DNA of 64,000 bases from Octopus sinensis. Taxonomy: Eukaryota. Shown one piece after another: positions 1,668 through 59,985 of the stretch. Under the pieces are notes generated by a model, which worked only from the letters and a program-made list of their open reading frames with translations, made no database searches and was not told the origin of the DNA. The position numbers were made by a program, and so were the translations under genes. The stretch spans positions 42,780,001 to 42,844,000 of the forward strand of contig NC_043002.1 of assembly GCF_006345805.1 (NCBI RefSeq). Direction: 5' to 3'. Position 1 is the stretch's first letter. Every line of letters starts with the position of its first letter.

Positions 1668-1669
1668 TG

Positions 1670-2446: not shown

Positions 2447-2478
<32 letters not shown>

Positions 2479-3052: not shown

Positions 3053-3087
3053 CTGTTACTCGGAGTTTCACGTTCCTGTTCGTCAGA

Positions 3088-3090: not shown

Positions 3091-3131
<41 letters not shown>

Positions 3132-3133
<2 letters not shown>

Positions 3134-3378: not shown

Positions 3379-3472
<94 letters not shown>

Positions 3473-3632
3473 TATATGCGGCGGGCTTCTTTCAATTTCC
3501 ATCTACCAAATCCACTCACAAGGCTTTGGTCGGCCCAAGGCTATAGTAGAAGACACTTGCCCAAAGTACCACGCAATGAGACTGAACCCGGAACCATGTG
3601 GTTCGTAAGCAAGCTACTTACCACACAGCCAC
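3132..3632 (-). mobile_element. tRNA-derived SINE (family A) with internal microsatellite
   Basis: A/B-box-like head (GTGGCTGTGTGGTAAG...GGTTCCGGGTTCAGTC) and (GAGTAAAA)n tail. Many copies in the window. Confidence 0.85.
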
Positions 3633-5863: not shown

Positions 5864-6141
5864 ATATATTTCTCTTGTTTTAATCGCTTCATTCATTCAT
5901 TCATTCATCTAACCCGTAATACTAACATGTACTATTCCCTAAAATCTTAATCTTCTCTCCCTGTTTCATAATGTTTTTGTCATTGTTCTCTTGAAAACTG
6001 GCCATGTGTATTTTCTCTCTTCTTTTTAATTGCTTCATTCATTCATCTAACCTGTAATACTAACATGTACTATTCCCTAAATCATTAGTTTTCTCTCTGT
6101 TTCATAATGTTTACATCATTGTTCTCTGGTAAAAATGGCCA
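5864..6141. repeat. Local tandem duplication, about 140 bp x2
   Basis: 5864-6004 and 6005-6141 share TAATACTAACATGTACTATTCCCTAAA and flanking sequence. Confidence 0.85.
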
Positions 6142-9400: not shown

Positions 9401-9875
9401 GTGCTTGAGAAAACCAGTCAAGTGAAATTGTAGTCATGGTGTTGGTGTCATATAACTGGCATGTAAAGAGCACCTTTCGACCATTGGACCTCACAGCGGC
9501 AAAGTGGCTGAGTTCTTTTGAGTATTGGGCCTCACAAATGCAATGACCAAAACCTTTTGCTTTATGTCGTGCTTGAGAAGTCCCATCAGGCTGAGCAAAA
9601 TGGTGGTGCACCGGAGCACTGTATACAATAATTTCATTATTATTTAAAATCGCAGTCATGGCAGATACTGGTGTCACGCAAAGGGCACCCATGCTGGTGG
9701 CACATAAAAGCACCCATTACACTCTCTGAGTGATTGGTGTTAGGAAGGGAATCCATCCATAGAAAACCATGCTAGATCAGACTGGAATCTGGTGCAGCCT
9801 TCCAGCTTACCAGCCCTAGTCAAACCGTCCAACTCATGCCAGCATGAACAACGGACGTTAAATGACAATGATGAT
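6437..9875 (+). mobile_element. Near full-length but degenerate RTE LINE (APE + RT)
   Basis: CCIQEVRWRG, VAGDFNGHVG, QFGFVPGRSTTDAIF, AFVDLEKAFDRV, LLYADD and LHWFGYV occur in broken frames. The 3'-UTR has the GAT-type tail. Confidence 0.92.
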
Positions 9876-9951
9876 ATTATGTTATGAATGTATTGAATTT
9901 ATGATTTTCTGAAAATTCATTTTGTAATTAAAACTGTTGTTTCTTATCCAG

Positions 9952-14100: not shown

Positions 14101-14806
14101 AAAGGACCTGGGTATCTTGGTGGATTCCTCCTTTTCACCTTCGGCCCAGTGCGTCCATGCTGCCAACAAAGCGCGCGGAATTCTGTTTTTGATTCGACGG
14201 TCATTCGGAATGCTCACAGCAGCCATATTCCTGCCACTCTATGTCACGCTGGTGAGACCCATATTGGAGTATGGGATTCAAGCCTCTTCTCCTTATTTCC
14301 TCAAAGACATACAGCACCTGGAAAGAGTCCAGAGGCTGGCTACCCGCATGGTTCATGGTCTCAAAAATTTGTCCTACGAAGAAAGGCTGAGGACGCTCGA
14401 CCTTTATTCTCTTGAAAAACGCCGCCGCCGTGGTGATCTCATTCTCACCCACAACATCATAAGCGGGAAGTGTAACCTCTCGAAAGAGCTGTTCTTCACT
14501 CCTGCTCCGGAGCGTCGGCTGCGGGGTCATTCCGAAAAGCTCTACCTGTGACGATTTCATCTCAATCGAAGGAGAGGAACTCTCTCCGTCCGGGTTGCGG
14601 ATCCGTGGAACAAGCTGCCAGACGAGATGGTGAAGATGCCGATGACCGCTTTGTTCAAAGCCTCCCTAGACCTCAAGTGGCCTGAACTCTTTACATGAAC
14701 ACCACCCTGTACTTAACTCCATGTCCCCCTACATGGCCTTGCTATTTGCTTTTGAGCCAAATTAACTAACTAACTAACTAACTTCAGCTTTATATATATA
14801 GAGAGA
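11125..14806 (-). mobile_element. Non-autonomous Helitron (11125-about 11488 plus about 14783-14806), split by a CR1 LINE
   Basis: The minus-strand 5' end is TCTCTCTATATATATAAAG at 14806. The 3' end is the hairpin CCCGAGCAACGCTGGG (11137-11152) followed by CTAG (11125-11128). It sits between A11124 and T14807 with no TSD. Confidence 0.8.
11489..14782 (+). mobile_element. CR1-clade LINE, ORF1 C-terminus plus complete ORF2 with a few stops and frameshifts, (AACT)n tail
   Basis: APE motifs YTNSCSL, AITETWL, DR..RRGGGVA, VYRPP, LGDFN and TDH. RT motifs NYRPVSLTS, LDFAKAFDSV, QGSVLGPLLF and FGDD. C-terminal RRRRGDLI and LRGH. Confidence 0.93.
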
Positions 14807-14924: not shown

Positions 14925-15127
14925 TTTTTTTACTTGTTTCAGTCATTTGACTGCGGCCATGCTGGAGCACCGCCTTTAGTCGAGCAAATCGACCCCGGGA
15001 CTTATTCTTTGTAAGCCTAGTACTTATTCTATCGGTCTCTTTTGCCGAACCGCTAAGTTACGGGGACGTAAACACACCAGCATCAGTTGTCAAGTGATGC
15101 TAGGGGGACAAACACAGACACACAAAC

Positions 15128-15689: not shown

Positions 15690-18664
15690 CAAGGCAAAGG
15701 GAGAGATGGCTGCTTATAAATGCCAAAACCTTCCCAGGTGAAGAATGTACCCCACAACATAGACTGGTAGTTAGTGACTTTAGGATCAGGACTAGGAGGA
15801 CAACCAGAAGACGACAAATATGGAGAAGAAGGATCTGGAAGCTTAAGATCCTGCAAATGGACAGAGATTTAGGGACATATTACTTGAAGCCTCTGACGAA
15901 GTAGAAGGGGATAGAGCATCACAGGGGGTAGAAGACAGCTGGACGTTTCTAAGGGACAACCTGCTGAGAGCCACTGACCAGATCTGTGGCTGGTGCAAAG
16001 TCCCCTCTCGACCTAGAATACGTGGTGGTGGAACAATATTGTAGACAGGGCTATTAGAGAAAAGAGACAGGCTTGGAAGTCTGGAAAAATGGGGGTAGCA
16101 GGGGATTGTATCAGACTGCCAAAAGAGAAGCTAGGAGACAGGTTTATTTAGCCAGAGGGGAAGCAGATAAGAAAAAATTTGCCAATGTTCTGCGCCGTGA
16201 GGACCAAAGACTGGAGGTGTTTCGTGTTGCAAGACAGTGTGTGAGAGAGAATCGTGATGTGGTAGGAGAGAAGTGTGTTCGCATGGAAGATGGTTCACTT
16301 GCGCTAAATGAGGATGCAAAGAGAGAGGTTTGGAGATGCCACTATGAAAGGTTGCTGAATGAAGAAAATGAATGGGATAAAGAGAGTCTGCCGAATGTTG
16401 ACCCAACAGAGGGACCAGCTATCCGAGTTGATAGTTCCGTGGTAGCTAAGGCAATTAGAAGCATGAAGACAGGGAAAGCCCCAGGCCCATCAGGAATCAC
16501 TGCAGAGATGCTCAAAATGTCTGGTAGTGTCGGCTATAGCCTAGTCACCCGTATAGTTAATCAGGTGATACACAAAGGGGTCATACCCATGACTGGTGTA
16601 GCAGTATAATAGTCAACTGCTACAAAGGTAAAGGTGATGCCCTAGATACAAATAACTACAGAGGTATCAAGCTGTTGGACCAGGTGATGAAGGTTACGGA
16701 GAGGGTCATAGCCCAACTAATTAGAGAGAGAGTTAGTTTAGATGAGATGCAGTTTGGGTTTGTGCCAGGGAAAAGTACTACTGATGCTATATTCCTGGTA
16801 AGGCAGCTGCAGGAGAAATACCTAGCCAAGATAAGCTCCTGTACCTGGCTTTTGTTGACATGGAGAAAGCCTTCGACAGGGTCCCCCGATCCCTTATCTG
16901 GTGGGCAATGAGGAAACTAGGGATAGATGAATGGTTAGTGAGAGCTGTGTGCGGGCCATGTACAGGGACGCCGCTATAGGGTGAGGGTTGGAATGTGTAC
17001 AGTGAAGAATTCCGGGTAGAGGTAGGAGTCCACCAAGGCTCAGTACTCAGCCCCCTCCTATTTATCATAGTCCTCCAGGCAATAACGGAGGAATTCAAGA
17101 CAGGATGCCCTTGGGAGCTCCTCTATGTATGACCTTGCTCTAATTGCTGAGTCGCTATCAGAACTGGAGGAGAAGTTTCAGGTGTGGAAACAAGGATTAG
17201 AATCGAAGGGCCTCAGAGTCAATCTAGCTAAAACCAAGTCGTAATCAGTAGGAAGGTATACAAATCACAAACACCTTCAGGTAGATGGCCCTGCTCGATC
17301 TGTAGAAAAGGTGTAGGTAGAAACTCTATAAGATGCACCCAGTGTAAGCTATGGACACATAAGAGATGCAGCAATGTCAAAGGAAGGCTAACTAGGAAGA
17401 TGGTTTTTGTATGTGGCAGATTGCTCAGGAACAATAAACACTGAAAATGCTCTGAGACCAACTTGCGTCACTTTCCAGGGAGAAAAACTAGAAATAGTTG
17501 ATAGTTTCCGTTACCTAGGTGACCAAGTCAGCAGGGGGGGCGGGTGTGCTGAAAGTGTAACTGCTAGAGTAAGAATAGCTTGGGCAAAGTTCAGAGAGCT
17601 CTTACCACTACTGGTGACAAAAGGCCTCTCGCACAGAGTGAAAGGCAGACTGTATGATGCGTGTGTACGAACAGCCATGCTACATGGCAGTGAAATGGGC
17701 CGTGACTGCTGAGGATATGCGTAAGCTCGCTAGAAATGAAGCCAGTATGCTCCTATGGATGTGTAATGCCGGTACTCACACTCGGCAGAGTGTAAGTACC
17801 TTGAGAGAAAGCTGGACTAAGAAGCATCATTGTGGTGTGCAAGAGAGACGTTTGCGCTGGTATGGTCATGTGGCGAGAATGGATGAGATAGTTGTGTGAA
17901 AAAGTGCCAACCCTAGCTGTTGAGGGACCTGTGGAAGAGGCAGACCCAGGAAAACCTGGACGAGGTGGTGAAGCACGACCTTCGAACTTTAGGTCTCACT
18001 GAGGAAATGACTAGAGACCGAGACCTCTGGAAGTGTGCTGTGCGCGAGAAGACCGGCAGGACAAGTTGAGTCCATAACCCGTGGCCTTCTACATGGGATG
18101 GAGCCAGCCTACGTATGCATACCTTCCCTTCTTGGGACACAAAACTCTACTTGTGAACGTGATGAGGCAAGTGAGGATCAGAATCGAAATCGATCAATGG
18201 AATTGCGGATGTGCTACCAGTGCCGGTGGCATGTCCAACTCTGCTTGTGAAACCCGTTGAAGGCAAGTGACGATCAGAATCGAAATCGATCAATGAAATT
18301 GCAGATGTGTTACCAGTGCCGGTGGCATGTAAGAGAACTTTCCGTTTCGCGACCGTTGCCAGCACCGCGCCCCGTTTCGTGTCCGTTGCCCTCTCGCCTG
18401 GCCCTCGTGCCGGTGGCACATAAAAAGCACCATCTTCGTGGCCGTTTGCCAGCTCTGTCTGGCACCAGTGCGGGTGGCACGTAAAAAGCACCCACTACAC
18501 TCACGGAGTGGTTGGCGTTAGGAAGGGCATCCAGCCGTAGAAACACTGCCAGATTTGACTGGGCCTGATGAAGCCTTCTGGCTTCACGACCCCGTAGAAA
18601 ACCGTCCAACCCATGCTAGCATGGAAAACGGACGCTAAACGATGATGATGATGATGATGATGAT
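15690..18664 (+). mobile_element. 5'-truncated young RTE LINE with modular 3'-UTR and (GAT)n tail
   Basis: RTE ORF2 motifs split mainly by 1-bp deletions. Highly similar to the copy at 34680-37634. Confidence 0.93.
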
Positions 18665-19493
18665 ACATGATGGGATTCTTTCAATTCCCATCTATCAAAT
18701 CCACTCACATTGCATTGGTCGGCCCAAGGCTATTGTAGAAATCCTTTACCCAAAGTGCCTCACTGTGGGACTGAACTCTGAACCATGTGGTTGAGAAACA
18801 AGCTTCTTACTGCACTGTCATGCCACACCTTATTTTTAAAAAAAATTTGGGAAGTCATTAAGTTAGCTTTCAAATTCATATACTTTATTCCTTCATCACT
18901 GAACAAACACTTGATTGTTTAGGCTCTCATTTTTGTGCTTTAATGTCACTTTATGAGAATATGACAAAATGGCATCATAAAGCTGGTACATAAATAAATA
19001 AATAGAAGGTTTGGTTACTGTTTGTTCAAAGTTTTATTACGTATCTTCTTTATTTGCTAACATTATACAAATGGTGTAACTAGACAACAAGTAAATAATG
19101 ATATTGCATTTCTAGTGCACACACATGCACGTGCACGCACACATGAGTACTCAATTGTTTTTCTCTTCTACTTGAAGTAATATATGCTAATATGCTTGAG
19201 CCATGTTATCTTCTCTGTAATTCTATCCTATTTTGATTTTGTAAAAAATTCTAAGTTTTCACAAACTTTTAAAATGTTATACTAACTTACTACTATTTTT
19301 TGAATATGCAGCAGTGATGTCTTTGTGAATTCATGTAATTAAATTTAGGACTTATTGTTTGCAGAATGTATTTTCTTTAGGTCGACTAAATCATTGGCTG
19401 CAGGAAAACTGCATGTAAAATTATTTATTCAAGGTCTTTGGTAAAACAGAGGTGGGAGTACAAATAGTAATTAGCTATATAGATGTGTTAGGG

Positions 19494-29187: not shown

Positions 29188-30685
29188 TTAAACATCAAAT
29201 CTAAAATCAAAAGAGTTTTCATTCTATAGTTAATGATGATCAGAAATGTTGGTTTAAATGCATTTATGATAAACTTTTTTTATTGAATTTCTGTTGAGTT
29301 TTGCTTAATATATTCATTTTCACTTTAGCATATTTATTTTGAACTTAAGATTTCAACCTCAAATAAAGTCTGGGTTGTGTGAATGACACTCATCTGTTGA
29401 ATGTATGTCAATGAGTGTTATGTATTTAAAAACTGAAGAGGGTTAGCGATAAAATAGATTTTGTTGGAGTACTACTGTTTATAAGTTTTGTATGTATGTT
29501 ACATAGATTGTTATATGTTGAGTATTTTAGTAGGATGAGCTGTAAAAGTGAAATGACTATGTGGATAAACTTTTAGACACTATACTCATCGGGTACAGGT
29601 TCAGCTTGGCTGCTGTTGTTTCATTGAATTTCTGAGCAGAACACTTTATTTTATATTGTCTTAGTTCGATAAGTATTAGAAAGAATGATTCCTTTTGTTT
29701 TATTTTTCATTATAATAATTCCTTTTGTAGGTATTAGAAATGAAAGATCATTAAGCCTGGTTATCCATTAGTGAAAGGTCAAGCAATTCAGTTTAAGGGG
29801 AATAAATTGTGTTCAGCTGAACAGTTTGCTATTGTTTATGTAGTTAAGATGTTAAGTTGCACTAATCTCCATCATATTAACAGTAGAGTGACAAAGAAAA
29901 TGGTCTCATTATTCAAGTAATAAAAAGACAAATAGCTTGTATGTAACTTAGATCTTATAACTGAAGCACTTTTTATAAGATCATTGATTAGTGATGTAGT
30001 TAATGAAAGTTCTATTTCCAAACTTATTTTTTTTAATTGTACAAAAATAATATTATACATTGTTGGCATCATAAGAATTTATGAATTTCAAGAAGTGAAA
30101 TAATTCTTCGTTGGAATAGTAGATCTCGAAGCAAATAAAACTATAAATAATAGTTCATAAATATTCAACCTTTTCTGTTCAAAGGGATTTTTTAAATGGC
30201 TTAATATTCACATACTATTATTTATTGCTTTATCTGTTTAGACATCCACTGTTCCAGAAAAGAATTATTTCTGTTATATATATTGTTGCAGATCATCATC
30301 AGTTTATTTGGATTCCAAATCTTACCCACTATATATAGTTTTCAATATATCTATTAAACTTAAAGTGGCAAACTAGCAGAATCATTAACATGCTGGACAA
30401 AATGCTAAGCAACATTTTGTCTGTCTTTATGTTCTGAGTTTAAATTCTATCATGGTCAGCTTTGCCTTTCATCCTTTGAAGGTCAATAAAATAAGTACCA
30501 GTTGAATACTAGGGTCAATGTAATTGACTTACCCCTTCTCCCAAAATTGTTGGCCTTGTACCAAATGTTGAAATCAATATATGTATTAAACCTAAAAGTG
30601 CTATTAATTTCTTCCTTTTTTTTCTTTCTTTCTTTCATATTGGTTGTTTTCAAATTATTTTTCAAATATCTTCATTTTACTCTAG

Positions 30686-31028: not shown

Positions 31029-31574
31029 TGAAATTCAAATGAAATTACCTGTGGCCTTGGCAACTAGATATTGAAAGAAATGGGAGAAACCTAGATTCAT
31101 TGACTAAGTCACATTTGAATAATAATAATAATAATAACAATAACTTAGCTGTTGATTCAAGAAACAGAGTGAGTTGTTGATTCATGAATAGCAGCAAAGA
31201 AATGGAACAATATTCGGGAATATATATTAAATAAGTGACAGACGCTGAAAATGGACGTTGGGTACAGGCCTTGTGCATACTAAGTTTACACACCACATAG
31301 CTAGATGGGCTCCGAAAAAAAGGCCATAGTATTTAATAATTATTATTATTATCTTTAAAATATTAATATTAAATTAATATACATGTACATTTTAATTGTT
31401 AAGTTTATTGCATAAGCATTTTGCAATGAAAGGGGGAGTTTGGCTGAAATTGAAATAAAATTACATGTAGCCCGGGCAACTAGGTATTGAAAGAAATGGG
31501 GGAATCTTAGATTCATTGACTAAGTCACATTTGAACAATAATAACTATAAGTTAGCTGTTGATTCAAGAAAGAG
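31029..31574. repeat. Direct repeat pair, about 135 bp each (31029-31168 and 31445-31574)
   Basis: Both share TAGATTCATTGACTAAGTCACATTTGAA and TTAGCTGTTGATTCAAGAAA. Confidence 0.8.
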
Positions 31575-31689: not shown

Positions 31690-32068
31690 CTCTTTTTACT
31701 CTTTTACTTGTTTCAGTCATTTGATTGTGGCCATGCTGGAGCATCGCCTTTAGTCGAGCAAATCGACCCCAGGGCTTATTCTTTGGAAGCCTAGTACTTA
31801 TTCTATCGGTCTCTTTTGTCAGGGACGTAAACACACCACCATCGGTTGTCAAGTGTTGTTGGGAGGGGCGACACAAACACAGACACACAAGCATACACAC
31901 ACACACACACATGACAGGCTTCTTTCAGTTTCCGTCTACCAAATTCACTCACAAGGCTTTGGTCGGCCCGAGGCTATAGTAGAAGATACTTGCCCAAGGT
32001 GCCATGCAGTGGGACTGAACCCGGAACCATGTGGTTGGTAAGCAAGCTACTTACCACACAGCCACTCA
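31690..32068 (-). mobile_element. SINE family A
   Basis: Same head, body and tail as 14925-15325. Confidence 0.85.
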
Positions 32069-33829
32069 CTTATTCCCAGCAACTTTTTGCTGTTTACACC
32101 ACCAAAATGAACATTCTTGTCATTAAAGACACATAGTTGTTATGATTTTTGGACGATAGTTGATGAGGGAAGAGGATGTCCATGTCTGGTCTGTGATTTT
32201 TCCATGTCTTCCCATGTCGTCCTTCTGTTCAATGTTTGAATCGCCCCCCTTCCCACCTCTATATACACACATGATGGGGTTTCTTTCAATTTCCACTTAC
32301 CAATGCTGACAAGTCTTTGGTCAACCTGGGGCTGTAGTTGAAGACAATTGCACAAGGTGCCATGCAAGTGAACCCCGAAGCAAGGGGCTGGGAAACAAAC
32401 TTCTCTAACTACACACAACTATGCCTGCATGAAAATTATAACAATTCTTTTATTGACTTAGTCTTTTTCCTCTCCTTTTTCTATCATATAGATAATTTAT
32501 TTAGCTGAAGTAATTTGTTCATACACCAGGATTGCATCGTTATTATTTAGAAGTAATTAACCTACTTTTCTCTAGACTCTTGCCATGAAATATATTTTCG
32601 TCTGTCTGATTTCTACAGCTGTTTTCCCATCTGTTTTTCTATGCCCAGCTTGTTCAATGTAACCTTAGAAGCTTTCTTGGAAAGATACTTTTATAATGTG
32701 CATTACTAGTATATCCTTCGCGGAATGTTTATTTTAACTTCAAATGTAACCTCCCACTCCCTCATCTCTTTTATTGTTCGTCTTGTACTTGTTTCAGTCA
32801 CTGTACTACGACCATGCTGGGGCACCGCCTTAGTTGGACAATACAACCTCAGTACTTATTTTCATTAAGCCTAGAGCTAATATTCAATAACCACATTTAT
32901 CTCCACTAATACTATCATCATCATCATCATCATCATTTAACATCCATTTTCCATGCTGGTATGGGTTAGATGGTTTGACAGCTGATGAAATAGATGACTG
33001 TATCTATCATGCTCCAATATCTGCATTGGCATGATTTCTATGGTTGGATGCCCTTTCTAATGCCAAGGTTGCCTTTTGTCATGCCATTGATTTTTGTTTT
33101 CATTTTAACCTTTCATGTTCCCTCATGCTAACACTGAACAGATATTCAGCTGTTTACTTCAGCAAATTGTGGTGTTTAGGAGTTGGTGCATTTATCTCCC
33201 AAGTGAACAATCTTTCCTATTGCCTGCCTTACAATTTGTAATTTATTGCTATATGGTTAAGAAGTTCACTTCCCAACCACATGGTTTTGGGGCCAGTCCC
33301 ACTGTATGGCATTTTGGGCTAGTATCCTCTTATTACAGCTCTGGGATGACCAAAGATTTGGTACATGGAATATGAAAGAAGCCCATAATGTTTCTCTCAT
33401 CTTCATATGTTTACTCTTACTGGTTGTAAACAGTGGCCTTGCTAATAGTGTTATTTGCTTTTAGTCTGCCATGGAAGGATGTCCAAGCTTTTTGTTGATT
33501 GATAGATTAGGATATTTATTATGTTGCTTGGAAACAAGTGGGGATCGGCAACACAAAGGGCATCTGGCCATAGAAAACTCTGCCCCCAAATACCAACATA
33601 CTTTTAAATGACCTGTACAAAACTTGGGAAATTAAACATTAAAAAGGCTGATACTTTTACTATCCATTAGCCTAATATTTCTTCAGACACCAGTACCTTA
33701 GTTACACAGTAAATATTAATTTCTAAGTCGATTCTGATATTCTTAAAAAGATTATTCTCATCAGCATGAAAAACTGTCTAACCCATGCTAGCATGGAAAA
33801 TGGATGCTACATGATGATGATGATAGGCT

Positions 33830-34185
33830 CAGGTATGGCTGTGTGGTTAAGAAAGTTGCTTTGCAACCATGTGGTTTCAGATTCAGTCCCACTGTGCAAC
33901 ACTTTGGGCAAGTGTCTTCTACTACGGTCCAGGTTGATCAATGCCTAGTGAAGGAATCTGGTGGATGGAAACTGTGTGTGTATGTGTGTGTGTTTGTGTT
34001 TATCCCCTACCTCTATGTGACAACCAGCGTTGGTTTCTTTATACCCCCATAACTGAGTGGTTCACCAAAAAAGAAGCCAATGGAATATGTACCAAACTTA
34101 AAATGAGTATTAGAGTCAATTTGTTTAATTACTCTCAAAGGCAGTGTCTCAGCATGATCACAGTTCAGTGACTGAAACAAGTATA
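33830..34185 (+). mobile_element. SINE family A, CpG-decayed
   Basis: Head GTATGGCTGTGTGGTTAAG and tail GACTGAAACAAGTA. Confidence 0.75.
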
Positions 34186-34679: not shown

Positions 34680-37634
34680 TCGGGCCAACATACCAGCCAA
34701 ATTGACTACATCCTTGCCAGGCAAAGGGAGAGATGGCTGCTTATAAATGCCAAAACCTTCCCAGGCAAAGAATGTACCCCACAACATAGACTGGTAGTTA
34801 GTGACTTTAGGATCAGGACTAGGAGGATAACCAGAAGACGACCAACATGGAGAAGAAGGATCTGGAAGCTTAAAGATCCTGCGAATGGACAGAGATTTAG
34901 GGACATGCTACTTGAAGCCTTTGACGAAGTAGAGGGGGATAGAGTATCACATGGGGTAGAAGACAACTGGATGTTTCTAAGGGACAACCTGCTGAGAGCC
35001 ACTGACCAGATCTGTGGCTGGTGCAAAGTCCCCTCTTGTCCCAAGGTAACGTGGTGGTGGAACAGTGTTGTAGACAGGGCTATTAGAGAAAAGAGACAGA
35101 CTTGGAAGGACTGGAAGAATGGTGGTAGCAGGGAATTGTATCAGACTGCCAAAGGGAAGCTAGGAGACAGGTCTATCTAGCCAGAGGGGAAGCAGATAAG
35201 AAAAAATTTGCCAATGTTCTGCGCCGTGAGGACCAAAGACTGGAGGTGTTTCGCGTTGCAAGACAGTGTGTGAGAGAGAATTGTAATGTGGTAGGAGAGA
35301 AGTGTGTTCGCATGGAAGATGGTTCACTTGCGCTAAATGAGGATGCAAAGAGAGAGGTTTGGAGACGCCACTATGAAAGGTTGCTGAATAAAGAAAATGA
35401 ATGGGATAAAGAGTGTCTGCCAAATGTTGACCCAACAGAGGGACCAGCTATCCGAGTTGACAGTTCCTTGGTAGTTAAGGCAATTAGAAGCATGAAGACA
35501 GGGAAAGCCCCAGGCCTATCAGGAATCACTGCAGAGATGCTCAAAATATCTGGTAGTGTCGGCTATAGCCTAGTCACCCGTATAGTTAATCAGGTGATAC
35601 ACGAAGGAGTCATACCCAATGACTGGTGTAGCAGCATAATAGTCAACTGCTACAAAGGTAAAGGTGACGCCCTAGTAACAATTAATTACAGAGGTATCAA
35701 GCTGTTGGATCAGGTAATGAAGGTTACGGAGAGGGTCATAGCCCAACTAATTAGAGAGAGAGTTAGTTTAGATGAGATGCAGTTTGAGTTCGTGCCAGGG
35801 AAAAGTACCACTGATGCTATATTCCTGGTAAGGCAGCTGCAGGAGAAATACCTAGCCAAAGATAAGCCCCTGTACCTGGCTTTTGTTGACATGGAGAAAG
35901 CTTTCGACAGGGTCCCCGGATCCCTTATCTGGTGGTCAATGAGGAAACTAGGGATAGATGAATGGTTAGTGAGAGCTGTGCGAGCCATGTACAGGGATGC
36001 TGCTAGTAAGGTGAGGGTTGGCAACGAGTACAGTGAAGAATTTCGGGTAGAGGTAGGGGTCCACCAAGGCTCAGTCCTCAGCCCCCTCCTATTTATCATA
36101 GTCCTCCGGGCAATAACGGAGGAATTCAAGACAGGATGCCCTTGGGAGCTCCTCTATGCTGATGACCTTGCTCTAATTGCTGAGTCACTATCAGAACTGG
36201 AAGAGAAGTTTCAGGTGTGGAAGCAAGGATTAGAATCGAAGGGCCTTAGAGTCAATCTAGCTAAAACCAAAGTCCTAATAAGTAGGAAGGTAGACAAATC
36301 ACAAACGCCTTCAGGTAGATGGCCCTGCTCGATCTGTAGAAAAGGTGTAGGTAGAAACTCTATAAGATGCACCAAGTGTAAGCTATGGACACATAAGAGG
36401 TGCAGCAATGTCAAAGGAAGGCTAACTAGGAAGATAGTTTTTGTATGTGGCAGATGCTCAGGAACAATAAACACTGAAAATGCTCTGAGACCAACTTCTG
36501 TCACTTTCCAGGGAGAAAAACTAGAAAGTTGATAGCTTCCGTTACCTAGATGACCAAGTCAGCAGTGGGGGCGGGTGTCCTGAAAGTGTAACTGCTAGAG
36601 TAAGAATATCCTGGGCAAAGTTCAGAGAGCTCTTATCTCTGCTGGTGACAAAAGGCCTCTCGCTCAGAGTAAAAGGCAGACTGTATGACGCATGTGTATG
36701 AACAGCCATGCTACATGGCAGTGAAACATGGGCCGTGACTGCTGAGGATATGCGTAAGCTCGCAAGAAATGAAGCCAGTATGCTCCGATAGATGTGTAAT
36801 GTCAGTATTCATACTCAACAGAGTGTAAGTACCTTGGGAGAAAAGCTGGACCTAAGAAGCATCAGATGTGGTGTGCAAGAGAGACGTTTGCGCTGGTATG
36901 GACATGTGGCAAGAATGGATGAAGATAGTTCTGTGAAAAAGTGCCACACCCTAGCTGTTGAGGGAACCTGTGGAAGAGGCAGACCCAGGAAAACCTGAGA
37001 CGAGGTGGTGAAGCACGACCTTCGAACTTTAGGTCTCACTGAGGAAATGATTAGAGACCAAGCCCTCTGGAAGTATGCTGTGCGTGAGAAGACCCGGTAG
37101 GACAAGTGAGACCATAACCCATGGCCTTCTACATAGGATGTAGCCAGTCCACTTATGCATACCTTCCCTTCTTGGGACACAAAACTCTACTTGTGAAGAC
37201 CTGTTGAGGCAAGTGAGAATCAGAATTGAAATCAATCAATGGAAATTGCAGCTGAGTTACCAGTGCCGGTGGCACGTAAGAGAACCGTCCGAACGTGGCC
37301 GTTGCCAGCGCCGCCCCGACTGACCTCGTGCTGGTGGCATGTAAAAAGCACCATCCGTTCGTGGCTGTTGCCAACCTCGCCTGGCCCCTGTGCCGGTGGC
37401 ACATGAAAAGCACCATCCGATCGTGGCCGTTTGCCTGACTCGTCTGGCACCTGTGCCGGCGGCACGTAAAAAGCACCCACTACACTCATGGAGTGGTTGG
37501 CGTTAGGAAGGGCATCCAGCCGTAGAAACATTGCCAGATCAAACTGGGCCTGGTGCAGCCTTCTGGCTTCCCAGACCCCAGTTGAACCGTCCAACCCATG
37601 CTAGCATAGAAAGCGGACGCTAAACGATGATGAT
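34680..37634 (+). mobile_element. 5'-truncated young RTE LINE with a 428-codon open RT segment
   Basis: ORF 35246-36532 carries FVDMEKAFDRV, GVHQGSVLSPLLF and LLYADD, plus a Cys-rich insert (CSICRKG...CTKC..WTHKRC...CGRC). 3'-UTR and GAT tail present. Confidence 0.95.
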
Positions 37635-39117: not shown

Positions 39118-39310
39118 TGAGCTGGCAGAATCATTAGCATGCTGGGTAAAATGCTTAGCAGCATTTCATTCTTCTTTATGTTCTGGGTTCAAATGCTGCC
39201 TAGGTTGACTTTACCTTTCATCCTTTCAGGATCAATGAAATAAGTACCAGTTGAGCACTGGGCTTGATGTAATCAACTATCCCTCACCTGAAATTGCTGG
39301 CCTTGTGTCA
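39118..39310 (+). mobile_element. tRNA-derived SINE family B
   Basis: GAGCTGGCAGAATC...GGGTTCAAAT...CTTTCATCCTTTC...AAGTACCAGTTGAGCACTG. Other copies at 30365-30570 (+), 40270-40870 (+, split), 57790-57975 (-) and 62290-62495 (-). Confidence 0.75.
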
Positions 39311-39814: not shown

Positions 39815-40359
39815 GTATGTATTTATATGAGCTTTTTAAAACTAATTATTTCCTGATAAATAAATTCTAATAAATTAAAATTATTTGTTAGGAACAGTGT
39901 AAACAAAATGTTATCACCACCATCATCATCATTTAGTATTCTAGTTTTTTTTTTTCTTTCATCATTTTGGTTCAGCTATGGATCTATTTATTGTATCAAT
40001 CTAAGAGATTGATTTTTTTCCTTCAACATTCTGATTTATAACTGGAAACTAAAAGCTCTCTGTCATACACACACACATGCAGAGCCTTCTTTGTGGATTT
40101 GGTAGTTAGAAAGTGAAAGAAACCTTTGTGTGTGTGCCTTCTTGTTATGACATCATACAACAGCTGTAAATGAGTGTCACCATCATACAAATGTATGATG
40201 TATACAATTAAAATGAATGAAAATGTTTAAATTATAAGATTAAAAAATACAATTTATTATATTGCTAGAGGAAGGTGGTTAGCATGTCGGCTGGACGAAA
40301 TGCTTAGTGACATTTCTTCTGGGTTTATGACCTGAGTTCAATGCTGCTAAGATCTACTT

Positions 40360-40727
40360 ACTTGTACTTGTGGCGACATTCACTCTGGGCGGGTTGAGTC
40401 GGCTTCTACTCATGGAAGAAGTTTCGTGGGAATATGTGGATTTCACAAGCGGTCCCCAACAGTCCTGCATGTGGAGACATCCTGTTTGCTGCAGATTGTC
40501 CATAGATGCAGGGACAGAACGACTGAGAAGCCGCCGGTTGCCGAAGCAGACACCCTGAGGATTTTCACCAGAGCCCTGTCTGCCGGGTTGTGGCCCTAAT
40601 ACCACTCGGTGTCAGACCAATCCACCTTGGGTGGCCCTACCAGGAACCGAAGTTCCCGATGGCATAGCTCTGACACTACTCATTGCCAGCGTCCCCATCA
40701 CGGTGAGGAGGGGATGGACTTTGGGGA
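40360..40727 (-). mobile_element. Short GC-rich retroposon with a structured 5' head and RTE-type 3' end, inserted in a family B SINE
   Basis: Perfect TSD GCTAAGATCTACTT at 40346-40359 and 40728-40741. Minus-strand tail (ACAAGT)2 and a 3' hairpin GAGT...ACTC like the RTE 3' stem. Confidence 0.85.
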
Positions 40728-41009
40728 CGCTAAGATCTACTTCGCCTTTCATCATTTTGGGGATGATAAAAAAAAGTACCAGTTGAGCACTGGAACAGGG
40801 TTATTCAGTTACATTGACAAACACTTTTCCGCTAAAATTGCAGACTTTGTGCCAAAATTTGAAACAATTATCTTGTTAGAGAATATCTAAGTGTTGTTTA
40901 TTTATTTTACATTAACAGTATTTCTTATAATTCTGTTTTAACATATATTCAAGACACATGTTTGCTGAAGGATCATTGTTTTTATTTATTTTGTTTATTG
41001 TTTTTATAG

Positions 41010-48159: not shown

Positions 48160-49163
48160 GTGTGGTGGAACAATGTTGACAGGGCCATTAGGGAAAAGAA
48201 ACAGGCTTGGAAGGACTGGAAGAATGGCAGTATCAGGGAATTGTATCAGACTGCCAGAAGAGAAGCTAGGAGACAGGTTTATTTAGCCAGAGGGGAAGCA
48301 GATAAGAAAATATTTGCCAATGTTCTGCGCCTTGAGGACCAAAGACTCGAGGTATTTCTTGTTGCAAGACAGTGTGTGAGAGAGAATCGTGATGTCGTAG
48401 GAGAGAAATATGTCTGCATGAATGATGGTTTGCTTGCATTAAGCGAGGCTACAAAGAGAGGTTTGGAGATGCCACTATGAAAGGTTGCTAAATAAAGAGA
48501 ATAAATGAGAGAAAGAGAGTCTGCCAAAATGCTGACCCAGCAGAGGGCTCAGCTATTTGAATTGACAGTACCTTGGTAGATAAAGCAATTAAGGGTATGA
48601 AGACAGGGAAAGCCCTCAACCCATCAGGAATCACCGCAGAGATGCTCAAAATATCTGGTATTGTCGGCTGTAGTCTAGTCACCCGTATAGTCAACACCAT
48701 AGTCAATTGCCACAAAGGTAAAGCTGATGCTTTAGATACAAATAATTACAGAGGTATCAAGTTGTTGGATCAGGTAATGAAGATCATGGAGAGGGTCATA
48801 GCCCAACTAATTAGGGAGAGAGTCAGTCTAGATGAGTTGCAGTTTGGGTTTGTGACAAGGAAAAGCACTACTGTTGCTATATTTCTTGTAAGACAGCTGC
48901 AGGAGAAATACCTGGCCAAAAATAAACCTCTGTACCTGGCTTTCGTTGGAGAAAGCCTTTGACAGGCTCCCCCGATTCCTTATCTGGTGGTCAATGAGAA
49001 AACTAGGGATAAATGAATGGCTAGTGAGAGTTGTGCAAGCTATGTACAGGGATGCTGTCAGTAAGGTGAGGGTTGGCAATGAGTACAGTGAAGAATTCCG
49101 GGTAGGGGTCCACTAAGGATCAGTCCTCAGCCCCCTCTTATTCATCGTAGTCCTCCAGGCAAT
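48160..49163 (+). mobile_element. RTE internal fragment, truncated at both ends with an internal deletion
   Basis: NYRGIKLLDQVMK, QFGFV and QLQEKYLAK. Confidence 0.88.
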
Positions 49164-50142: not shown

Positions 50143-51552
50143 AAAAAACATAAAATGGCAAAAAAAAGAAAAAATTCATTCTGAATTGGTTTCCTATCTG
50201 TTGATTAGCACTTTTCACTTTTTCTAGTAAAATATCAATTATAATTTTTTTTTTAGTTTGTACTTTCTGTATTGTTTTTCTTTCTGTCTTCAATTAGCTT
50301 TTCGTTATTTTTGAAAACAAAGAGTTTAATTTTAAATCAGCAGTGTATATTCCAAGTATTTTGATCATCAGTTTTTCCTTAAAATTTTATGACATTGTTT
50401 TTAAGCATGCAGGTGGCACATAAAAAACACCATTTGAGCATGGCCGTCGCCAGTACTGCCTGACTGGCCCTCAAGCCAGTGCCATGTAAAAGCACCCACC
50501 ACACTCTTGGAGTGGTTGGCGTTAGGAAGGGCATCCAGCTGTAACAACTGCCAGATCAGATTGGTGCCTGGTGCAGCTATCTGGCTCGCCAGTCCTCAGT
50601 CAAACTGTCCAACCCATGCCAGCATGGAAAGCAGACATTAAATGACGATGATGATGATGAGTTGTACATGTAGCCTCATTTACCACTGATTCATTCTTCA
50701 CTGATCTGGGCTAACATGATACACTCAGTTGTGAACCTTGTTTCATTTATCACAGATAGAGGTATGATAACACAGGTAAGCAATCAATCAAATATTCTGC
50801 TTGTACTGGAGAATGCACCCATGCTCAGCTGCCCAGTATGCACTGACCATCATTTGTGTTTACATCTTCATGTTGCAAGTCTACATATTTTTTTTGTATG
50901 GATTTACGGACTCATACGCATCAACATGGTACCAGTGAACAGGAGAAAATACAAAGGCATCTGATCCTAACAAATGATGTAGATGAAGGTATTATTTTTA
51001 CAGAAAAACGTAGAAGTGATCAAGAAAATATATGATAAGGGAAGCTTCACTACTGTGGACTGCAAGTGTGGTATCAATGAATCTACTAATCATTCCATTT
51101 AAAGAATACATGGTGATGACTAATTTATCACTGTGTTTTGTTTTTACCCAAACTCCTGTGATAAACAAGGACAGATGCATTTCTTAGAAAAAAAAAACCG
51201 ATGACAATGGAGATGGCTAATACAGACCATCATCTGATTATATGAATTAACCCTTTAGCATTCAGATTACTCTGTTAAATGTAATACTTATTTATCCACA
51301 TTGTTTTAAAATTAATCATGCTTTATCTCACAGCTTCAAGATTTCAATAATGTGATTACTCTTTACACTTAGACTTGTTTCAGTCATTTGACTGCAGCCA
51401 TGCTGGAGCACCGCCTTTAGTCGAACAAATCAACCCCAGGACTTATTCTGAGTAAGCCTAGTACTTATTCTATCGGTCTCTTTTGCCGAACTGCTAAGTG
51501 ACGGGGATGTAAACACACCAGCATTGATTGTCAAGCAATGTTGTGGGGATAA

Positions 51553-51781: not shown

Positions 51782-52263
51782 TCTTTACTCTTTTACTTGT
51801 TTCAGTCATTTGACTGCGGCAATGCTGGAGCACCACCTTTAGTCGAGCAAATCGACCCTGGACTTATTCTTTGTAAGCCCAGTACTTATTCTATCGGTCT
51901 CTTTTTGCCGAACCACTAAGTGACGGGGACGTAAACACACCAGCATCGGTTGTCAAGCGATGGTGGAGGGACAAGCACAGACACACAAACATATACACAC
52001 ACATACATATATATATATATACATATATACGACAGGCTTCTTTCAGTTTCCATCTACCAAATCCACTCACAAGGCATTGGTCGGCCCGAGGCTATAGCAG
52101 AAGACACTTGCCCAAGATGCCACGCAGTGGGACTGAACCCGGAACCATGTGGTTGGTAAGCAAGCTACTTACCACACAGCCACTCCTGCGCCCTCCACAC
52201 AGCCACTCCTGCGCCCTCCACACAGCCACTCCTGCGCCCTCCACACAGCCACTCCTGCGCCCT
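51782..52263 (-). mobile_element. SINE family A with a 4x tandem 23-bp head; tandem with another copy at 51370-51750
   Basis: CCACACAGCCACTCCTGCGCCCT repeated four times at 52172-52263. Confidence 0.88.
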
Positions 52264-53938: not shown

Positions 53939-56084
53939 ATCTGGGAAGTGGTGGTTCATATTTGTCTGATTGCTATTCTTTGATCTGTCCACATGGGAGG
54001 TTCTGTCAAGAAAGTTTGCTCCAGGTCGGCCCCAGCCTTGATGAAGCTGACCTCTAATCTAAAGCATTTGAACCATGGTTGTCTCATTTTTTCCCCCTAA
54101 GTTTCGGAGACCCAGGACCATATTATCCAATATGCTTGTTTCTAAGACTTGAATTTAATTTGGTTGATCTTTCTAACAGGTCAAGTGATCAAGTAAAGGC
54201 TCACTTGGTTTGTATAATGACAAGATGGCAGCAAAGATATTAAGTACCAGACTAAATGTGCTTTCAACAAAGTATATCTGTGTTCTTAAGTTTGAGTCTT
54301 TTACGATTGACACTATCATCTCTTTAGCATTCTGGGATCAATTCATGTGGCTGTTACTTTTCTAACAGCACCATCCAAGCGGGATCACTGCCAGAGCAGC
54401 TGTCTGGCTTCCGTGCCGGTGGGCACGTAAAGAGCACCATTTGAGCGTGATCGTTACCAGCGTCGCCTTACTGACACTTGTGCCGGTAGCACGTAAACAA
54501 AACATTCGAGCGAGGTCGTTGCCAGTGCCGCTGGCCTGACTCCTGTGCAGGTGACACGTAAAAAACACCATTTTCGAGCGTGGCCGTTGCCAGTACCGCC
54601 AGACTGGTCCTCGTGCTGGTGACACGTAAAAGCACCCACTACACTCTCGGAGTGGTTGGCGTTAGGAAGAGCATCTAGCTGTAGAAACTACCAGATCAGA
54701 TTGGTGTCTCGTGCAGCCATCTGGTTCGCCAGTCCTCGGTCAAATCGTCCAACCCATGCCAGCATGGAAAGCGGACGTTAAACGAGGATGATAATAACAG
54801 TTATGTAGTTACTCGAAAGATATCTGCATTTCTAAAAGTTCTGTGATTAGTTGCTGATACAACACCACACACTCACATGAACACATACACGCACTCGTGC
54901 TTGGCTAGCATGGCTGTATGTTTGTTTGCTTTCCAACCATGTGGTTTCACTGTATGGCACTGTGGGCAAGTATCTGTTACTGTAGCCCCAGGCCAATCAA
55001 GGCCTTGTATGTGTGTTTGGTAGATGGAAACTGAAAGCATACTCATGTGTTTGTATCTTCTTAAATTGATGTCAAACTATAGTCGTAAATGAGTGCCACC
55101 ATCATACAAGCGCTGTCCTTTGTTTCCAATCTTCTGTGGAAACATGTCTTAACCAAATATTTTTTTTACTTGTGTCAGTTATTAGACTGTGGCCATTCTG
55201 GGGTACCGCTTTGAAGAATTTTTAAACGAATGAATCGATCCCAGTACATTTTTTAAAGCATGGTATTTATTCTATTGACCTCCTTTGCTGAGCCGCTAAG
55301 TTATGGTGACGTAAACACACCAACACTGGTTGTCAAGCGGTGGTGGTAGGCAAACACACACACATACACACACGTATATGACGGGCTTTTTGTTTCCATC
55401 TACAAAATCTGCTCAAAAGGCTTTGGTGGGTATGCGGCTACAGTAGAAGACGCTTGCCCATGGTTCCACGCAGTGGGACCAAACTCAGAATCATGTGGTT
55501 AGGAAACACACTTCTTACCACACAGCCACACCTGTGCCTGTCTGGTCGTGGTGGAAATACTACCTTGCTTGGAGACAGGTGAGGATAAACGACAGGAAGG
55601 GCATCTGGTCATCCTAAATCTACCTTGGGGAAAGATTCCGTCTAATCCATGCACGCATGGAAAAATGGACGTTAAAACAGTTATTTTATTTATTTATATA
55701 TGTATGTCAACAAGGTTACCATCAGGCTATATAAATTTGTTGACATAGCAATAAACAATGAATTTAAATAGCTTGTTGTTGACTAATTTTGCTTTGCTAA
55801 TAGAATATCTTCTTCACCAAACACTTTTGTAGGTCATTGTAAGATTGCTACATGAACTAGGTAATGTTATTATCTCAATGTTTCAAATATATAATGGAAA
55901 GATATTTTTATTGAAACGATCTTAGTTCAGGATTGGTAGATTTAATTAAATATTTTTTTCATTGAACCTGGAAAGATAAAAGACAAAGTTAATTTCAGTT
56001 GTATTTGAAGTCAGACAAGTAAGTTATATATATATATAATGTTTGTATATATATTTATATATATATATATATATGTTTGTTCCA

Positions 56085-59437: not shown

Positions 59438-59985
59438 TGAAGGTGCATGGTTCAGTGGTTAGAGCATCGGGCTCACAACCAGGAAGTAGTGAGTTTGATT
59501 CTCGGACTGGGCTGTGTGTTGTGTTTACTTCACGTTACTCCAGTTCACTTAGCTGTAGAAATGAGCTGCGATGTCACTGGTAGTAAGCTGTATTAGCCTT
59601 TGCCGTTCCCTTGGGTAACATCAGTGGCGTGAGAGGGGAGACTGGTATACATGGGCAGAAACGCTAGCACGCCGGATGAAATGCTTAGCTGTATTTCGTC
59701 TGTCGTTACGTTGTGAGTTCAAATTCCGCCGAGGTTGACTTTGCCTTTCATCCTTTCGGGGTCGATAAATTAAGTACCAGTTCCGCACTGGGGTCGATAC
59801 CTATGTCTGTCCTTGTTTGTCCCCTCTATGTTTAGCCCCTTGTGGGTAATAAAGAAATTGGTATACATGGGCAACTGCTGGTCTTCCACAAATAACCTTG
59901 CCTGGACTTGTTCCATGGAGAGGAACTTTCTAGGTGCAATCCCATGGTCATTCATGACCAGAGGGGGTCTTTACGCTTTACCCAG
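59438..59985 (+). mobile_element. SINE family C split by a young SINE B (59658-59858)
   Basis: Perfect 15-bp TSD TGGTATACATGGGCA at 59643-59657 and 59859-59873. Confidence 0.85.

What the first reader, a model, noticed from the sequence alone, without database searches (positions are those of the whole stretch)
40346..40741. Young 370-bp retroposon: HDV-ribozyme-like head fused to an RTE tail
Seen: a GC-rich minus-strand insert with a perfect 14-bp TSD and an (ACAAGT)2 tail. Its 3' end resembles the RTE ORF2 C-terminus (CWGPLV...SMSRSRLN) with a GAGT/ACTC hairpin, and it has no RT. The 5' end pairs as a 10-bp P1 (40721-40730 with 40688-40697; the terminal AGC overlaps the TSD). It also has a loop UCCUCACC (40702-40709) resembling HDV L3 UCCUCGCU, and GG right after P1 able to pair with the loop CC (P1.1), followed by GGCAA. 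GUCCA (40714-40718) is complementary to UGGAC (40498-40502) as P2. The intervening ~185 nt is highly structured, with an 8-bp GUGUCAGA/UCUGACAC stem, a C(UUCG)G hairpin at 40643-40656 and an 8-bp GGCAGACA/UGUCUGCU stem. Established: HDV-like ribozymes occur at RTE and R2 5' ends, and internally deleted non-autonomous LINE derivatives exist. Inference: this is a ribozyme-processed, RTE-mobilised short element with a very large P4. P3 has one mismatch (UCCC/GUGA) and J4/2 is short, so the fold is a candidate only.
Basis: partly seen in the sequence, partly recalled or inferred. Interest (0 to 1): 0.8.

Follow-up and report, generated by a model that had tools for sequence, protein, structure and literature searches.

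The report
Octopus retroposon with ribozyme-like head
A 369-base mobile-element copy inserted into an older repeat of an Octopus genome; its first 109 bases nearly fit, but do not fully fit, the fold of a known self-cutting RNA (HDV-like ribozyme) that such elements use to trim their own transcripts.

Summary
The insertion is real. It spans 40360-40728 with the minus strand as sense, has a perfect 14-bp TSD and an (ACAAGT)2 tail. Three paralogous copies of the host repeat serve as empty sites. No other copy was found in the window or in any collection I could reach.

The RTE claim is unsupported. The tail "ORF" has no protein relatives, and no LINE in the window shares this tail.

Its 5-bp P2 is expected by chance, its J4/2 is wrong, and its P4 is 185 nt.

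A better fold exists against the published HDV-like descriptor:
- P1 GUCCCCA/UGGGGAC starts exactly at the element's first base.
- J1/2 is AA.
- P2 is 7 bp, GUCCAUC/GGUGGAU (40713-19 with 40620-26).
- J4/2 is CCAA, with candidate catalytic C at 40630.
- P4 is a 58-nt domain capped by UUCG.

This fold has three defects: a C·U mismatch in P3, an A where L3 has its conserved G, and one extra A. A fit this good at a fixed start has chance p of about 7e-4.

Rfam finds nothing, and covariation cannot be tested. My verdict is a plausible (about 50%) decayed or variant HDV-like ribozyme on a non-autonomous retroposon, which is a known kind of element.

The parts
40346..40359 (.). Target-site duplication, copy next to the element's 3' end (GCTAAGATCTACTT)
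   Evidence: Identical to 40729-40742. Its last 5 bases, TACTT, are complementary to AAGUA of the tail repeat, which gives priming microhomology (read).
40729..40742 (.). Target-site duplication, copy next to the element's 5' end
   Evidence: Paralogous empty sites carry this segment once.
40360..40728 (-). Whole inserted element: 369 bp, 55% GC, no RT, no Pol III A/B boxes
40360..40371 (-). 3' terminal hexamer repeat (ACAAGT)2
   Evidence: It is the same type of tail as the A[ACT]AAG[AT] hexamers that end the window's abundant SINE family.
40722..40728 (-). Candidate P1 5' strand GUCCCCA; the predicted cleavage site is immediately 5' of G40728, the first base of the element
   Evidence: Seven Watson-Crick pairs with 40691-40697. 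Pairing continues 3 bp into the TSD (AGC/GCU).
40713..40719 (-). Candidate P2 5' strand GUCCAUC, following J1/2 AA at 40720-40721
   Evidence: Seven pairs, two of them G·U, with 40620-40626. RNAfold's own MFE for the 112-nt fragment uses this helix.
40699..40712 (-). Candidate P3 (CCC 40710-12 / GUG 40699-701, with a C·U mismatch in the middle) enclosing L3 UCCUCACC (40702-40709)
   Evidence: L3 fits UYYHCGNY except for A40704 in place of the conserved G. An extra A at 40698 lies between P3' and P1'.
40691..40697 (-). Candidate P1 3' strand UGGGGAC, followed by J1/4 GC (40689-40690; G40690 could form a 1-bp P1.1 with an L3 C)
40632..40688 (-). Candidate P4 domain, including the 9-bp stem capped by the UUCG tetraloop (core at 40643-40656)
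   Evidence: (60-nt segment, z = -1.8).
40627..40630 (-). Candidate J4/2 CCAA (fits CNRA); candidate catalytic C at 40630
40620..40626 (-). Candidate P2 3' strand GGUGGAU; it can instead close the local hairpin CCACC-CAA-GGUGG
40498..40502 (-).
40279..40868 (+). Older copy of a SINE-like repeat that was split by the insertion (approximate limits)

Best explanation
WHAT IT IS
The feature is one copy of a short non-autonomous non-LTR retroposon. It inserted by target-primed reverse transcription into an older SINE copy of an Octopus genome.

SHOWN
- An endonuclease nick left a DNA 3' end, ...CTACTT. This end is complementary to the AAGUA of the element's 3' hexamer repeat.
- Reverse transcription ran to the very first base of the RNA.
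- A 14-bp target-site duplication was created.

INFERRED
- The first 109 nt (40728-40620) are, or descend from, an HDV-like self-cleaving ribozyme.
- The fold runs P1 (7 bp, starting at base 1), J1/2 (2 nt), P2 (7 bp), P3, L3, P1', J1/4, a 58-nt P4 domain, J4/2 CCAA and P2'.
- In the source element this ribozyme would cut the RNA out of read-through host transcripts just 5' of G40728. That would define the 5' end without any promoter of the element's own.
- The 3' end and its hexamer repeats would recruit the reverse transcriptase of a partner LINE. That LINE is not identified and is not shown to be an RTE.
- This copy carries A40704 in place of the conserved L3 G, and a C·U mismatch in P3. 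It is therefore probably weak or dead as a ribozyme. The alternative is that the family uses a non-canonical core.
For: The insertion
- TSD, tail and empty-site paralogs are all in place.

The fold
- I scanned with the published RNArobo HDV-like descriptor. The element start gives a fold with 3 violations. All helix and joiner lengths equal those of sea-urchin HDV-like ribozymes printed in the same supplement: P1 7, J1/2 2, P2 7, P3 3. Those sea-urchin ribozymes score 0 violations in my scanner.
- Six of the seven sequence-constrained positions match: G1, L3 U and C, J1/4 R, and J4/2 C, R, A.

Chance levels
- At a fixed start, composition-matched shuffles reach 3 or fewer violations in 215 of 300,000 trials, p = 7e-4.
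- Given the hairpin, shuffling the downstream sequence gives a suitable CNRA plus P2' in 0.64% of trials. Shuffling both the loop and the downstream sequence gives 0.38%.

Energetics
- P1 plus the P4 domain (-33.2) plus the P2 duplex (-7.5) is comparable to the best nested fold (-39.8).
- RNAfold itself picks the new P2 for the 112-nt fragment.

Tolerance of the defects
- Natural R2 ribozymes tolerate a P3 mismatch and mismatches at the top of P1 (PMC3774820).
- CpG is depleted and CpA/TpG enriched in the element. The L3 CA could therefore be a decayed CG.

Other support
- There is no Pol III A/B box and no tRNA.
- HDV-like ribozymes on non-LTR elements, and on their internally deleted derivatives, are established (PMC3774820, PMC3414825, PMC6765202).
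Against: - Only one copy exists in any data I could reach, so covariation and a family consensus are unavailable.
- No Rfam ribozyme family matches, even at E<=10 on the 125-nt core.
- The strict published descriptor is not met.
- The missing L3 G is the very change that abolished cleavage in a Nasonia R2 ribozyme and that marks the inactive sow-bug element.
- About 40 loci in the 128 kb of both strands also reach 3 or fewer violations, mostly in AU-rich sequence. Across roughly 50-100 repeat 5' ends in the window, one chance hit of this quality has a probability of about 0.05-0.3.
- Competing helices exist. CCACC/GGUGG would sequester J4/2 and P2'. The 8-bp GUGUCAGA/UCUGACAC helix is incompatible with P4 closure and with P2.
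- Fold z-scores are unremarkable.
Confidence: 0.5

Rival explanations
1. The retroposon is real but the HDV-like resemblance is coincidental. The 5' hairpin with its pyrimidine-rich loop has another role or none (for example RNA stability, protein binding or promoter context). The 5' end then reflects a transcription start or a complete reverse transcription, not self-cleavage.
For: - No Rfam hit.
- Three violations lie in the catalytic core, including the conserved L3 G.
- About 40 comparable near-misses occur in the window.
- 7% of shuffles of the element contain some fold with 3 or fewer violations somewhere.
- A 7-mer partner for the P2 strand occurs somewhere in 16% of shuffles.
- The MFE folds prefer nested alternatives.
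- Only a single copy is available.
Against: - The fit starts at exactly the first base of the element, with p = 7e-4 for a fixed start.
- The geometry is identical to that of genuine ribozymes.
- CNRA sits directly before a 7-bp P2' (p = 0.006 given the hairpin).
- No promoter motif explains the 5' end.
Confidence: 0.37
2. The element is a chimeric or processed retrocopy. An unknown cellular structured RNA, or a fragment of an mRNA or lncRNA, was reverse-transcribed by a LINE enzyme and carries a LINE-type tail. It would then be a one-off event and not a mobile family.
For: - It is single-copy in everything searched.
- The GC-rich body is unlike the AT-rich surroundings.
Against: - No Rfam family, tRNA or protein homology exists for any part.
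- A hexamer-repeat tail instead of poly(A) implies recognition of a specific 3' end, which suggests a dedicated non-autonomous element (inference).
- The collections searched do not contain six-frame or raw Octopus genome data, so 'single copy' is uninformative.
Confidence: 0.1
3. One reading: a 10-bp P1, P2 GUCCA/UGGAC at 40498-40502, a roughly 185-nt P4, the catalytic C at 40505, and a tail derived from an RTE ORF2 C-terminus.
For: The hairpin, the loop and the 5-mer complement are physically present.
Against: - A 5-bp partner is expected in 30-74% of shuffles.
- The J4/2 bases before UGGAC, AUCUA, do not fit CNRA, and P2 is under 6 bp.
- P4 is far beyond described sizes for the loose descriptor.
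- P1 in this ribozyme family is 6-7 bp.
- No RTE or any other protein relative of the tail was found.
Confidence: 0.03

Closest known systems
HDV-like self-cleaving ribozymes at the 5' ends of non-LTR retrotransposons (R2, RTE-type drz-Agam-2, L1Tc Pr77, sea-urchin drz-Spur families)
   Same: - The order of elements is the same, and P1 starts at the first base of the element.
- Sizes match: P1 7 bp, J1/2 2 nt, P2 7 bp, P3 3 positions, L3 8 nt.
- L3 is pyrimidine-rich, J1/4 starts with G, and J4/2 is CNRA.

   Different: - The conserved L3 G is an A.
- P3 has a C·U mismatch.
- One extra A lies between P3' and P1'.
- P4 is a 58-nt, probably branched, domain.
- G1 pairs with C, whereas the sea-urchin examples printed in the supplement have a G·U wobble there.
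- There is no Rfam hit.
- Activity and covariation are untested.
SIDEs (short internally deleted R2 elements) and NARTc (the non-autonomous L1Tc derivative)
   Same: These are short, ORF-less elements. They keep a 5' ribozyme and a 3' end that the parent LINE's enzyme recognises (PMC3414825, PMC6765202).
   Different: - No parent LINE sharing either end has been found here.
- Insertion is not rDNA-specific.
- The host is a cephalopod.
Ordinary LINE-dependent SINEs, such as the window's abundant SINE ending in ...ATGACTGAAACAAGTA plus hexamer repeats
   Same: - Insertion is TSD-flanked.
- The hexamer-repeat tail is of the same type, A[ACT]AAG[AT].
- Size is a few hundred bp.
   Different: - There is no tRNA, 5S or 7SL head and no A/B boxes.
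- There is no sequence similarity to that SINE beyond the tail 7-mer.
Retroposons carrying other ribozymes (the schistosome hammerhead SINE-like elements; twister variants in S. mansoni non-LTR elements)
   Same: The logic is the same: a self-cleaving RNA defines the ends of the transcript of a mobile element (PMC6765202, PMC8501958).
   Different: The ribozyme class is different. No hammerhead or twister match was found here.

Membership tests
HDV-like self-cleaving ribozyme | Nested double-pseudoknot order P1-J1/2-P2-P3-L3-P3'-P1'-J1/4-P4-J4/2-P2' | tested here: met
   The fold at 40728-40620 was found with a scanner that implements the published descriptor. The scanner was validated on sea-urchin ribozymes.
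HDV-like self-cleaving ribozyme | P1 of 6-7 bp, with its first base (G/R, paired to Y) at the cleavage site | tested here: met
   GUCCCCA/UGGGGAC forms 7 Watson-Crick pairs, and G40728 is the first base of the element.
HDV-like self-cleaving ribozyme | P2 of at least 6 bp, ending next to P3 | tested here: met
GUCCAUC/GGUGGAU forms 7 bp, including two G·U pairs.
HDV-like self-cleaving ribozyme | P3 of 3 strict Watson-Crick pairs abutting P1' | tested here: not met
   CCC/GUG has a central C·U mismatch, and A40698 intervenes before P1'. Some active R2 ribozymes tolerate a P3 mismatch.
HDV-like self-cleaving ribozyme | L3 = UYYHCG(N)Y, with its conserved G | tested here: not met
   L3 is UCCUCACC, with A40704 in place of the G. 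The same change abolished cleavage in Nasonia R2.
HDV-like self-cleaving ribozyme | J1/4 begins with a purine able to form P1.1 with L3 | tested here: met
   J1/4 is GC, so only one G-C pair is possible. A P1.1 of one or two pairs is described.
HDV-like self-cleaving ribozyme | J4/2 = CNRA(N), carrying the catalytic C, directly before P2' | tested here: met
CCAA lies at 40630-40627.
HDV-like self-cleaving ribozyme | Match to curated covariance models (Rfam HDV clan) | tested here: not met
   No hit at E<=10 on 701 nt or on 125 nt. These models cannot represent pseudoknots and they penalise a large P4.
HDV-like self-cleaving ribozyme | Covariation across family members | not testable with these tools
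   No second copy was found anywhere.
HDV-like self-cleaving ribozyme | Site-specific, Mg2+-dependent self-cleavage | not testable with these tools
   This needs a transcription and cleavage assay.
Non-LTR retroposon inserted by target-primed reverse transcription | A target-site duplication, a simple-repeat 3' tail, an empty site, and no terminal inverted or long terminal repeats | tested here: met
   The two ends are unrelated to each other, read directly.
RTE-clade derived element | The 3' region is homologous to the 3' end or ORF2 C-terminus of an RTE LINE | tested here: not met
   The 84-aa tail frame has no protein relative. There is no DNA or protein similarity to any LINE in the window. 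The LINEs in the window end in (TAAC)n or (GAT)n.
Pol III SINE (tRNA/5S/7SL head) | A small-RNA-derived head with A and B boxes | tested here: not met
   No tRNA, no Rfam hit, and the best A/B-box matches have 2-3 mismatches.

The most novel reading that the evidence does not exclude
Octopus genomes may harbour a promoter-less, non-autonomous retroposon family whose HDV-like ribozyme is active with a non-canonical core: an A at the conserved L3 G position, a mismatched P3 and a branched 58-nt P4. That would widen the known sequence space of this ribozyme class. It would also be the first ribozyme-processed retroposon described in cephalopods.
Probability: 0.12. Interest if true: 0.6.

Novelty: new member of a known kind. 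Interest (0 to 1): 0.4.

Why it matters
Octopus genomes are rich in LINEs and SINEs, some claimed to be active in the brain.

If confirmed, this would add a cephalopod example to the ribozyme-terminated non-LTR retroposons. It would show that some of the genome's many unclassified short retroposons spread without their own promoter, by cutting themselves out of host transcripts. It would also give a handle (5'-OH RNA ends) for detecting their transcripts.

If the A-containing core proved active, it would be informative for ribozyme biochemistry.

If the resemblance is chance, the locus is an ordinary orphan retroposon insertion.

Tried and rejected
1. Other copies
- blastn and tblastn within the window found none.
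- Exact-pattern scans of viral, metagenome and genome collections, using three different segments, gave nothing. The one exception was a 23-nt match inside an Acidobacteriota chromosome with no flanking similarity, which I take as chance.
- Exact look-ups of four internal ORFs found nothing on record.
- 41 kb of O. vulgaris genome fetched through TE proteins contains no copy.
- A k-mer search of the supplements of the octopus LINE paper found nothing.

2. Coding origin of the tail
- The word-indexed protein search gave nothing.
- The exhaustive HMMER search gave three hits. Two are translations of an AT-rich tandem repeat that share no DNA similarity with the element. The third is an unrelated leucine-rich-repeat protein. 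All were rejected.
- Low stop-codon density occurs in three of the six frames, so it reflects GC content and not coding.

3. Other RNA classes
- The Rfam gathering and E-value scans, and ARAGORN, found nothing. The only near-hit is a 17-nt identity to a lncRNA model on the plus strand, which I take as chance.
- No Pol III boxes.

- It is not used in the MFE fold, and the 3' 81 nt are not unusually structured.

5. Alternative P3/L3 registers
- I tried UCA/UGA with a 3-nt loop, AUC/GAU with a 13-nt loop, and a shifted P1 AGCGUCC. All fit the descriptor worse (and reasoning).

Full report
WHAT IS THERE

The window is AT-rich, repeat-dense animal DNA. Its transposon copies are 86-96% identical to loci of the Octopus vulgaris assembly GCA_951406725.2. 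One LINE ORF is 94% identical to an annotated O. vulgaris protein. The host is therefore an Octopus.

At 40360-40728 lies a 369-bp block of 55% GC, between flanks of about 30% GC. It is bounded by a perfect 14-bp direct repeat, GCTAAGATCTACTT, at 40346-40359 and 40729-40742. This is the only isolated 14-mer repeat at 100-1000 bp spacing in the window.

Read on the minus strand, the block ends in (ACAAGT)2. When the flanks are joined across the block, they align without a gap to three other copies of a SINE-like repeat in the window: 39134-39261, 59671-59791 and 30392-30578. These paralogs act as empty sites. The block is thus a genuine insertion into an older repeat, and the 14 bp are a target-site duplication.

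The DNA end that would have primed reverse transcription...CTACTT-3', is complementary to the AAGUA of the tail repeat. This is the microhomology expected for target-primed reverse transcription by a LINE enzyme that uses a repeat tail (read; the mechanism is inferred).

The element has no RT and no Pfam domain. It has no tRNA or other known small-RNA head and no convincing Pol III boxes.

IS IT A FAMILY, AND IS THE TAIL FROM AN RTE?

I found no second copy. I looked in the following places:
- the window itself;
- 41 kb of O. vulgaris sequence I could fetch;
- viral, metagenome and prokaryote-genome collections;
- gene-call indexes;
- the supplements of the octopus LINE paper.

None of these collections holds raw Octopus genome sequence in searchable form. 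The best database relatives of another LINE in the window are only 50-78% identical. The absence of copies therefore says little.

A word-indexed search found nothing. An exhaustive HMMER scan of 1.84 billion representatives found only three spurious hits. Two are translated AT-rich tandem repeats; the contig I fetched for the best one has no similarity to the element. The third is an unrelated leucine-rich-repeat protein.

Three of the six frames are almost free of stop codons. That reflects GC content, not coding.

The LINEs in the window end in (TAAC)n or (GAT)n, not in ACAAGT. The only link is that the window's commonest SINE ends in ...ATGACTGAAACAAGTA followed by A[ACT]AAG[AT] hexamers. 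This hints at a shared, unidentified LINE partner. 'RTE tail' is therefore unsupported, though it is not excluded.

THE RIBOZYME QUESTION

The 5' hairpin is real. AGCGUCCCCA (40731-40722) pairs with UGGGGACGCU (40697-40688), and its outer three pairs use TSD bases.

As a yardstick I used the published HDV-like descriptor from the RNArobo paper's supplement (PMC4870747, Figs S11-S14):
- P1 of 6-7 bp, with G/R at +1 paired to Y;
- J1/2 up to about 50 nt;
- P2 of 6-7 bp;
- P3 of 3 strict pairs;
- L3 = UYYHCG(N)Y;
- J1/4 = RN;
- P4 variable;
- J4/2 = CNRA(N).

Its P2 has 5 bp, and a partner for that 5-mer is expected by chance in 30% of shuffles (Watson-Crick only) or 74% (with G·U). The bases before UGGAC, AUCUA, do not fit CNRA. 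Its P4 would be about 185 nt. A 10-bp P1 is outside the family's 6-7 bp.

I wrote a scanner for the descriptor. It allows a few violations and an optional single-base insertion before P1'. It scores 0 violations on sea-urchin HDV-like ribozymes printed in that supplement.

On the element, the scanner finds a different fold that starts at the element's first base:
- P1 GUCCCCA (40728-22) with UGGGGAC (40697-91);
- J1/2 AA;
- P2 GUCCAUC (40719-13) with GGUGGAU (40626-20);
- P3 CCC with GUG;
- L3 UCCUCACC;
- J1/4 GC;
- a 58-nt P4 domain containing the UUCG-capped stem;
- J4/2 CCAA (40630-27).

The helix and joiner lengths equal those of the sea-urchin ribozymes. Six of the seven sequence-constrained positions match.

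There are three violations:
- a C·U mismatch in the middle of P3;
- A40704 where L3 has its conserved G;
- one extra A (40698), which could equally be read as an A·A mismatch at the top of P1.

HOW MUCH IS CHANCE?

- Composition-matched shuffles reach 3 or fewer violations at a fixed start in 215 of 300,000 trials, p = 7e-4.
- With the hairpin kept and only the downstream sequence shuffled, a suitable CNRA plus P2' appears in 0.64% of trials. With both the loop and the downstream sequence shuffled, the figure is 0.38%.
- On the other side, about 40 loci in both strands of the window also reach 3 or fewer violations, mostly in AU-rich sequence. If one inspected every repeat 5' end in the window, the chance of one such coincidence is roughly 0.05-0.3.

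Energetically, P1 plus the P4 domain (-33.2 kcal/mol) plus the P2 duplex (-7.5) is on a par with the best nested fold (-39.8). RNAfold's own optimum for the 112-nt fragment uses the new P2.

Against the fold:
- Competing helices exist. CCACC/GGUGG would sequester J4/2 and P2'. The 8-bp GUGUCAGA/UCUGACAC helix clashes with P4 closure and with P2.
- Overall fold z-scores are ordinary.
- Rfam's ribozyme models find nothing, even on the 125-nt core. Those models cannot encode pseudoknots.

The literature cuts both ways. Active R2 ribozymes tolerate a P3 mismatch and mismatches at the top of P1. A G-to-A change at the L3 G, however, abolished cleavage in a Nasonia R2 ribozyme and marks the inactive sow-bug element, although it does not fully kill the viral ribozyme. 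CpG is depleted in the element and CpA/TpG are enriched. The L3 CA could therefore be a decayed CG. A perfect 14-bp TSD is still compatible with several percent divergence (inference).

VERDICT

The insertion and its mode of insertion are established. The ribozyme is a candidate only. I put about 50% on the head being, or descending from, an HDV-like self-cleaving ribozyme whose cut defines the element's 5' end. This copy is probably impaired.

I put about 37% on a coincidental resemblance and about 10% on a one-off retrocopy of an unknown RNA.

If real, it belongs to a known kind. Ribozyme-terminated non-LTR elements and their internally deleted non-autonomous derivatives are established: R2 and its SIDEs, L1Tc and NARTc, and RTE-type mosquito elements (PMC3774820, PMC3414825, PMC6765202). 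It would be a new member in a cephalopod.

The decisive work is to collect genome-wide copies from Octopus assemblies and to run a simple cleavage assay.

Noticed in passing
window 35246-36532 (+); related copies near 7560-9900, 16073-18670 and 48257-49040: This is a LINE family with an RT followed by a PHD/C1-like zinc finger (Pfam RVT_1 plus PHD). Its 3' end, ...CCGTCCAACCCATGCCAGCATGGAAA.CGGACG.TAAA(TGA)n, recurs 9 times in the window. The best database relatives are only 50-78% identical.
   Followed up: partly
window 11449-14780 (+): This is a CR1/L2-like LINE fragment. Its ORF ends at 14551 and its tail is (TAAC)n at about 14760-14782. It is 96% identical over 641 bp to O. vulgaris chromosome OX597823.1 (locus L002), which identifies the host genus.
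   Followed up: partly
window: 11 sites, e.g. 14931-14948 (-), 31705-31722 (-), 32786-32803 (-), 34166-34183 (+), 51794-51811 (-): An abundant SINE family has a 3' end ...CCAGCATGGCC.CAGTC.AATGACTGAAACAAGTA followed by hexamers A[ACT]AAG[AT]. Copy 32781-32792 reads ACAAGTACAAGA, which matches the candidate element's tail at 11 of 12 positions. This may mean they share a LINE partner.
   Followed up: partly
window 40633-40661 (+): There is a 17-nt exact identity (GGCCCUACCAGGAACCG) to the Rfam lncRNA model CDKN2B-AS_2, scoring 15.6 bits against a gathering score of 50. It is on the antisense strand of the element and is probably chance.
   Followed up: no
L001 810-832 (Acidobacteriota MAG OZ246889.1): A 23-nt exact match to the element's UUCG hairpin region lies inside a bacterial chromosome. 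There is no flanking similarity, so I judge it a chance match in 596 Gb.
   Followed up: yes
window 5899-6100 and 31069-31558: There are two local tandem duplications, with periods of about 138 bp and about 416 bp. They appear as runs of shared 14-mers.
   Followed up: no
window 1190-3500: There is a long, degenerate (TA)n/(TG)n/(TATG)n microsatellite tract. It generates spurious long ORFs (2083-2652 and 3287-3766).
   Followed up: no
window 50449-50570 and 54589-54710 (+): Two copies of one repeat family both give a 3-violation match to the HDV-like descriptor: P1 GCCAGU/GUUGGC, P3 CAC/GUG, L3 UCU[UC]GGA and J4/2 CAGA. The position lies inside the repeat, not at its 5' end, so this is probably chance.
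   Followed up: no
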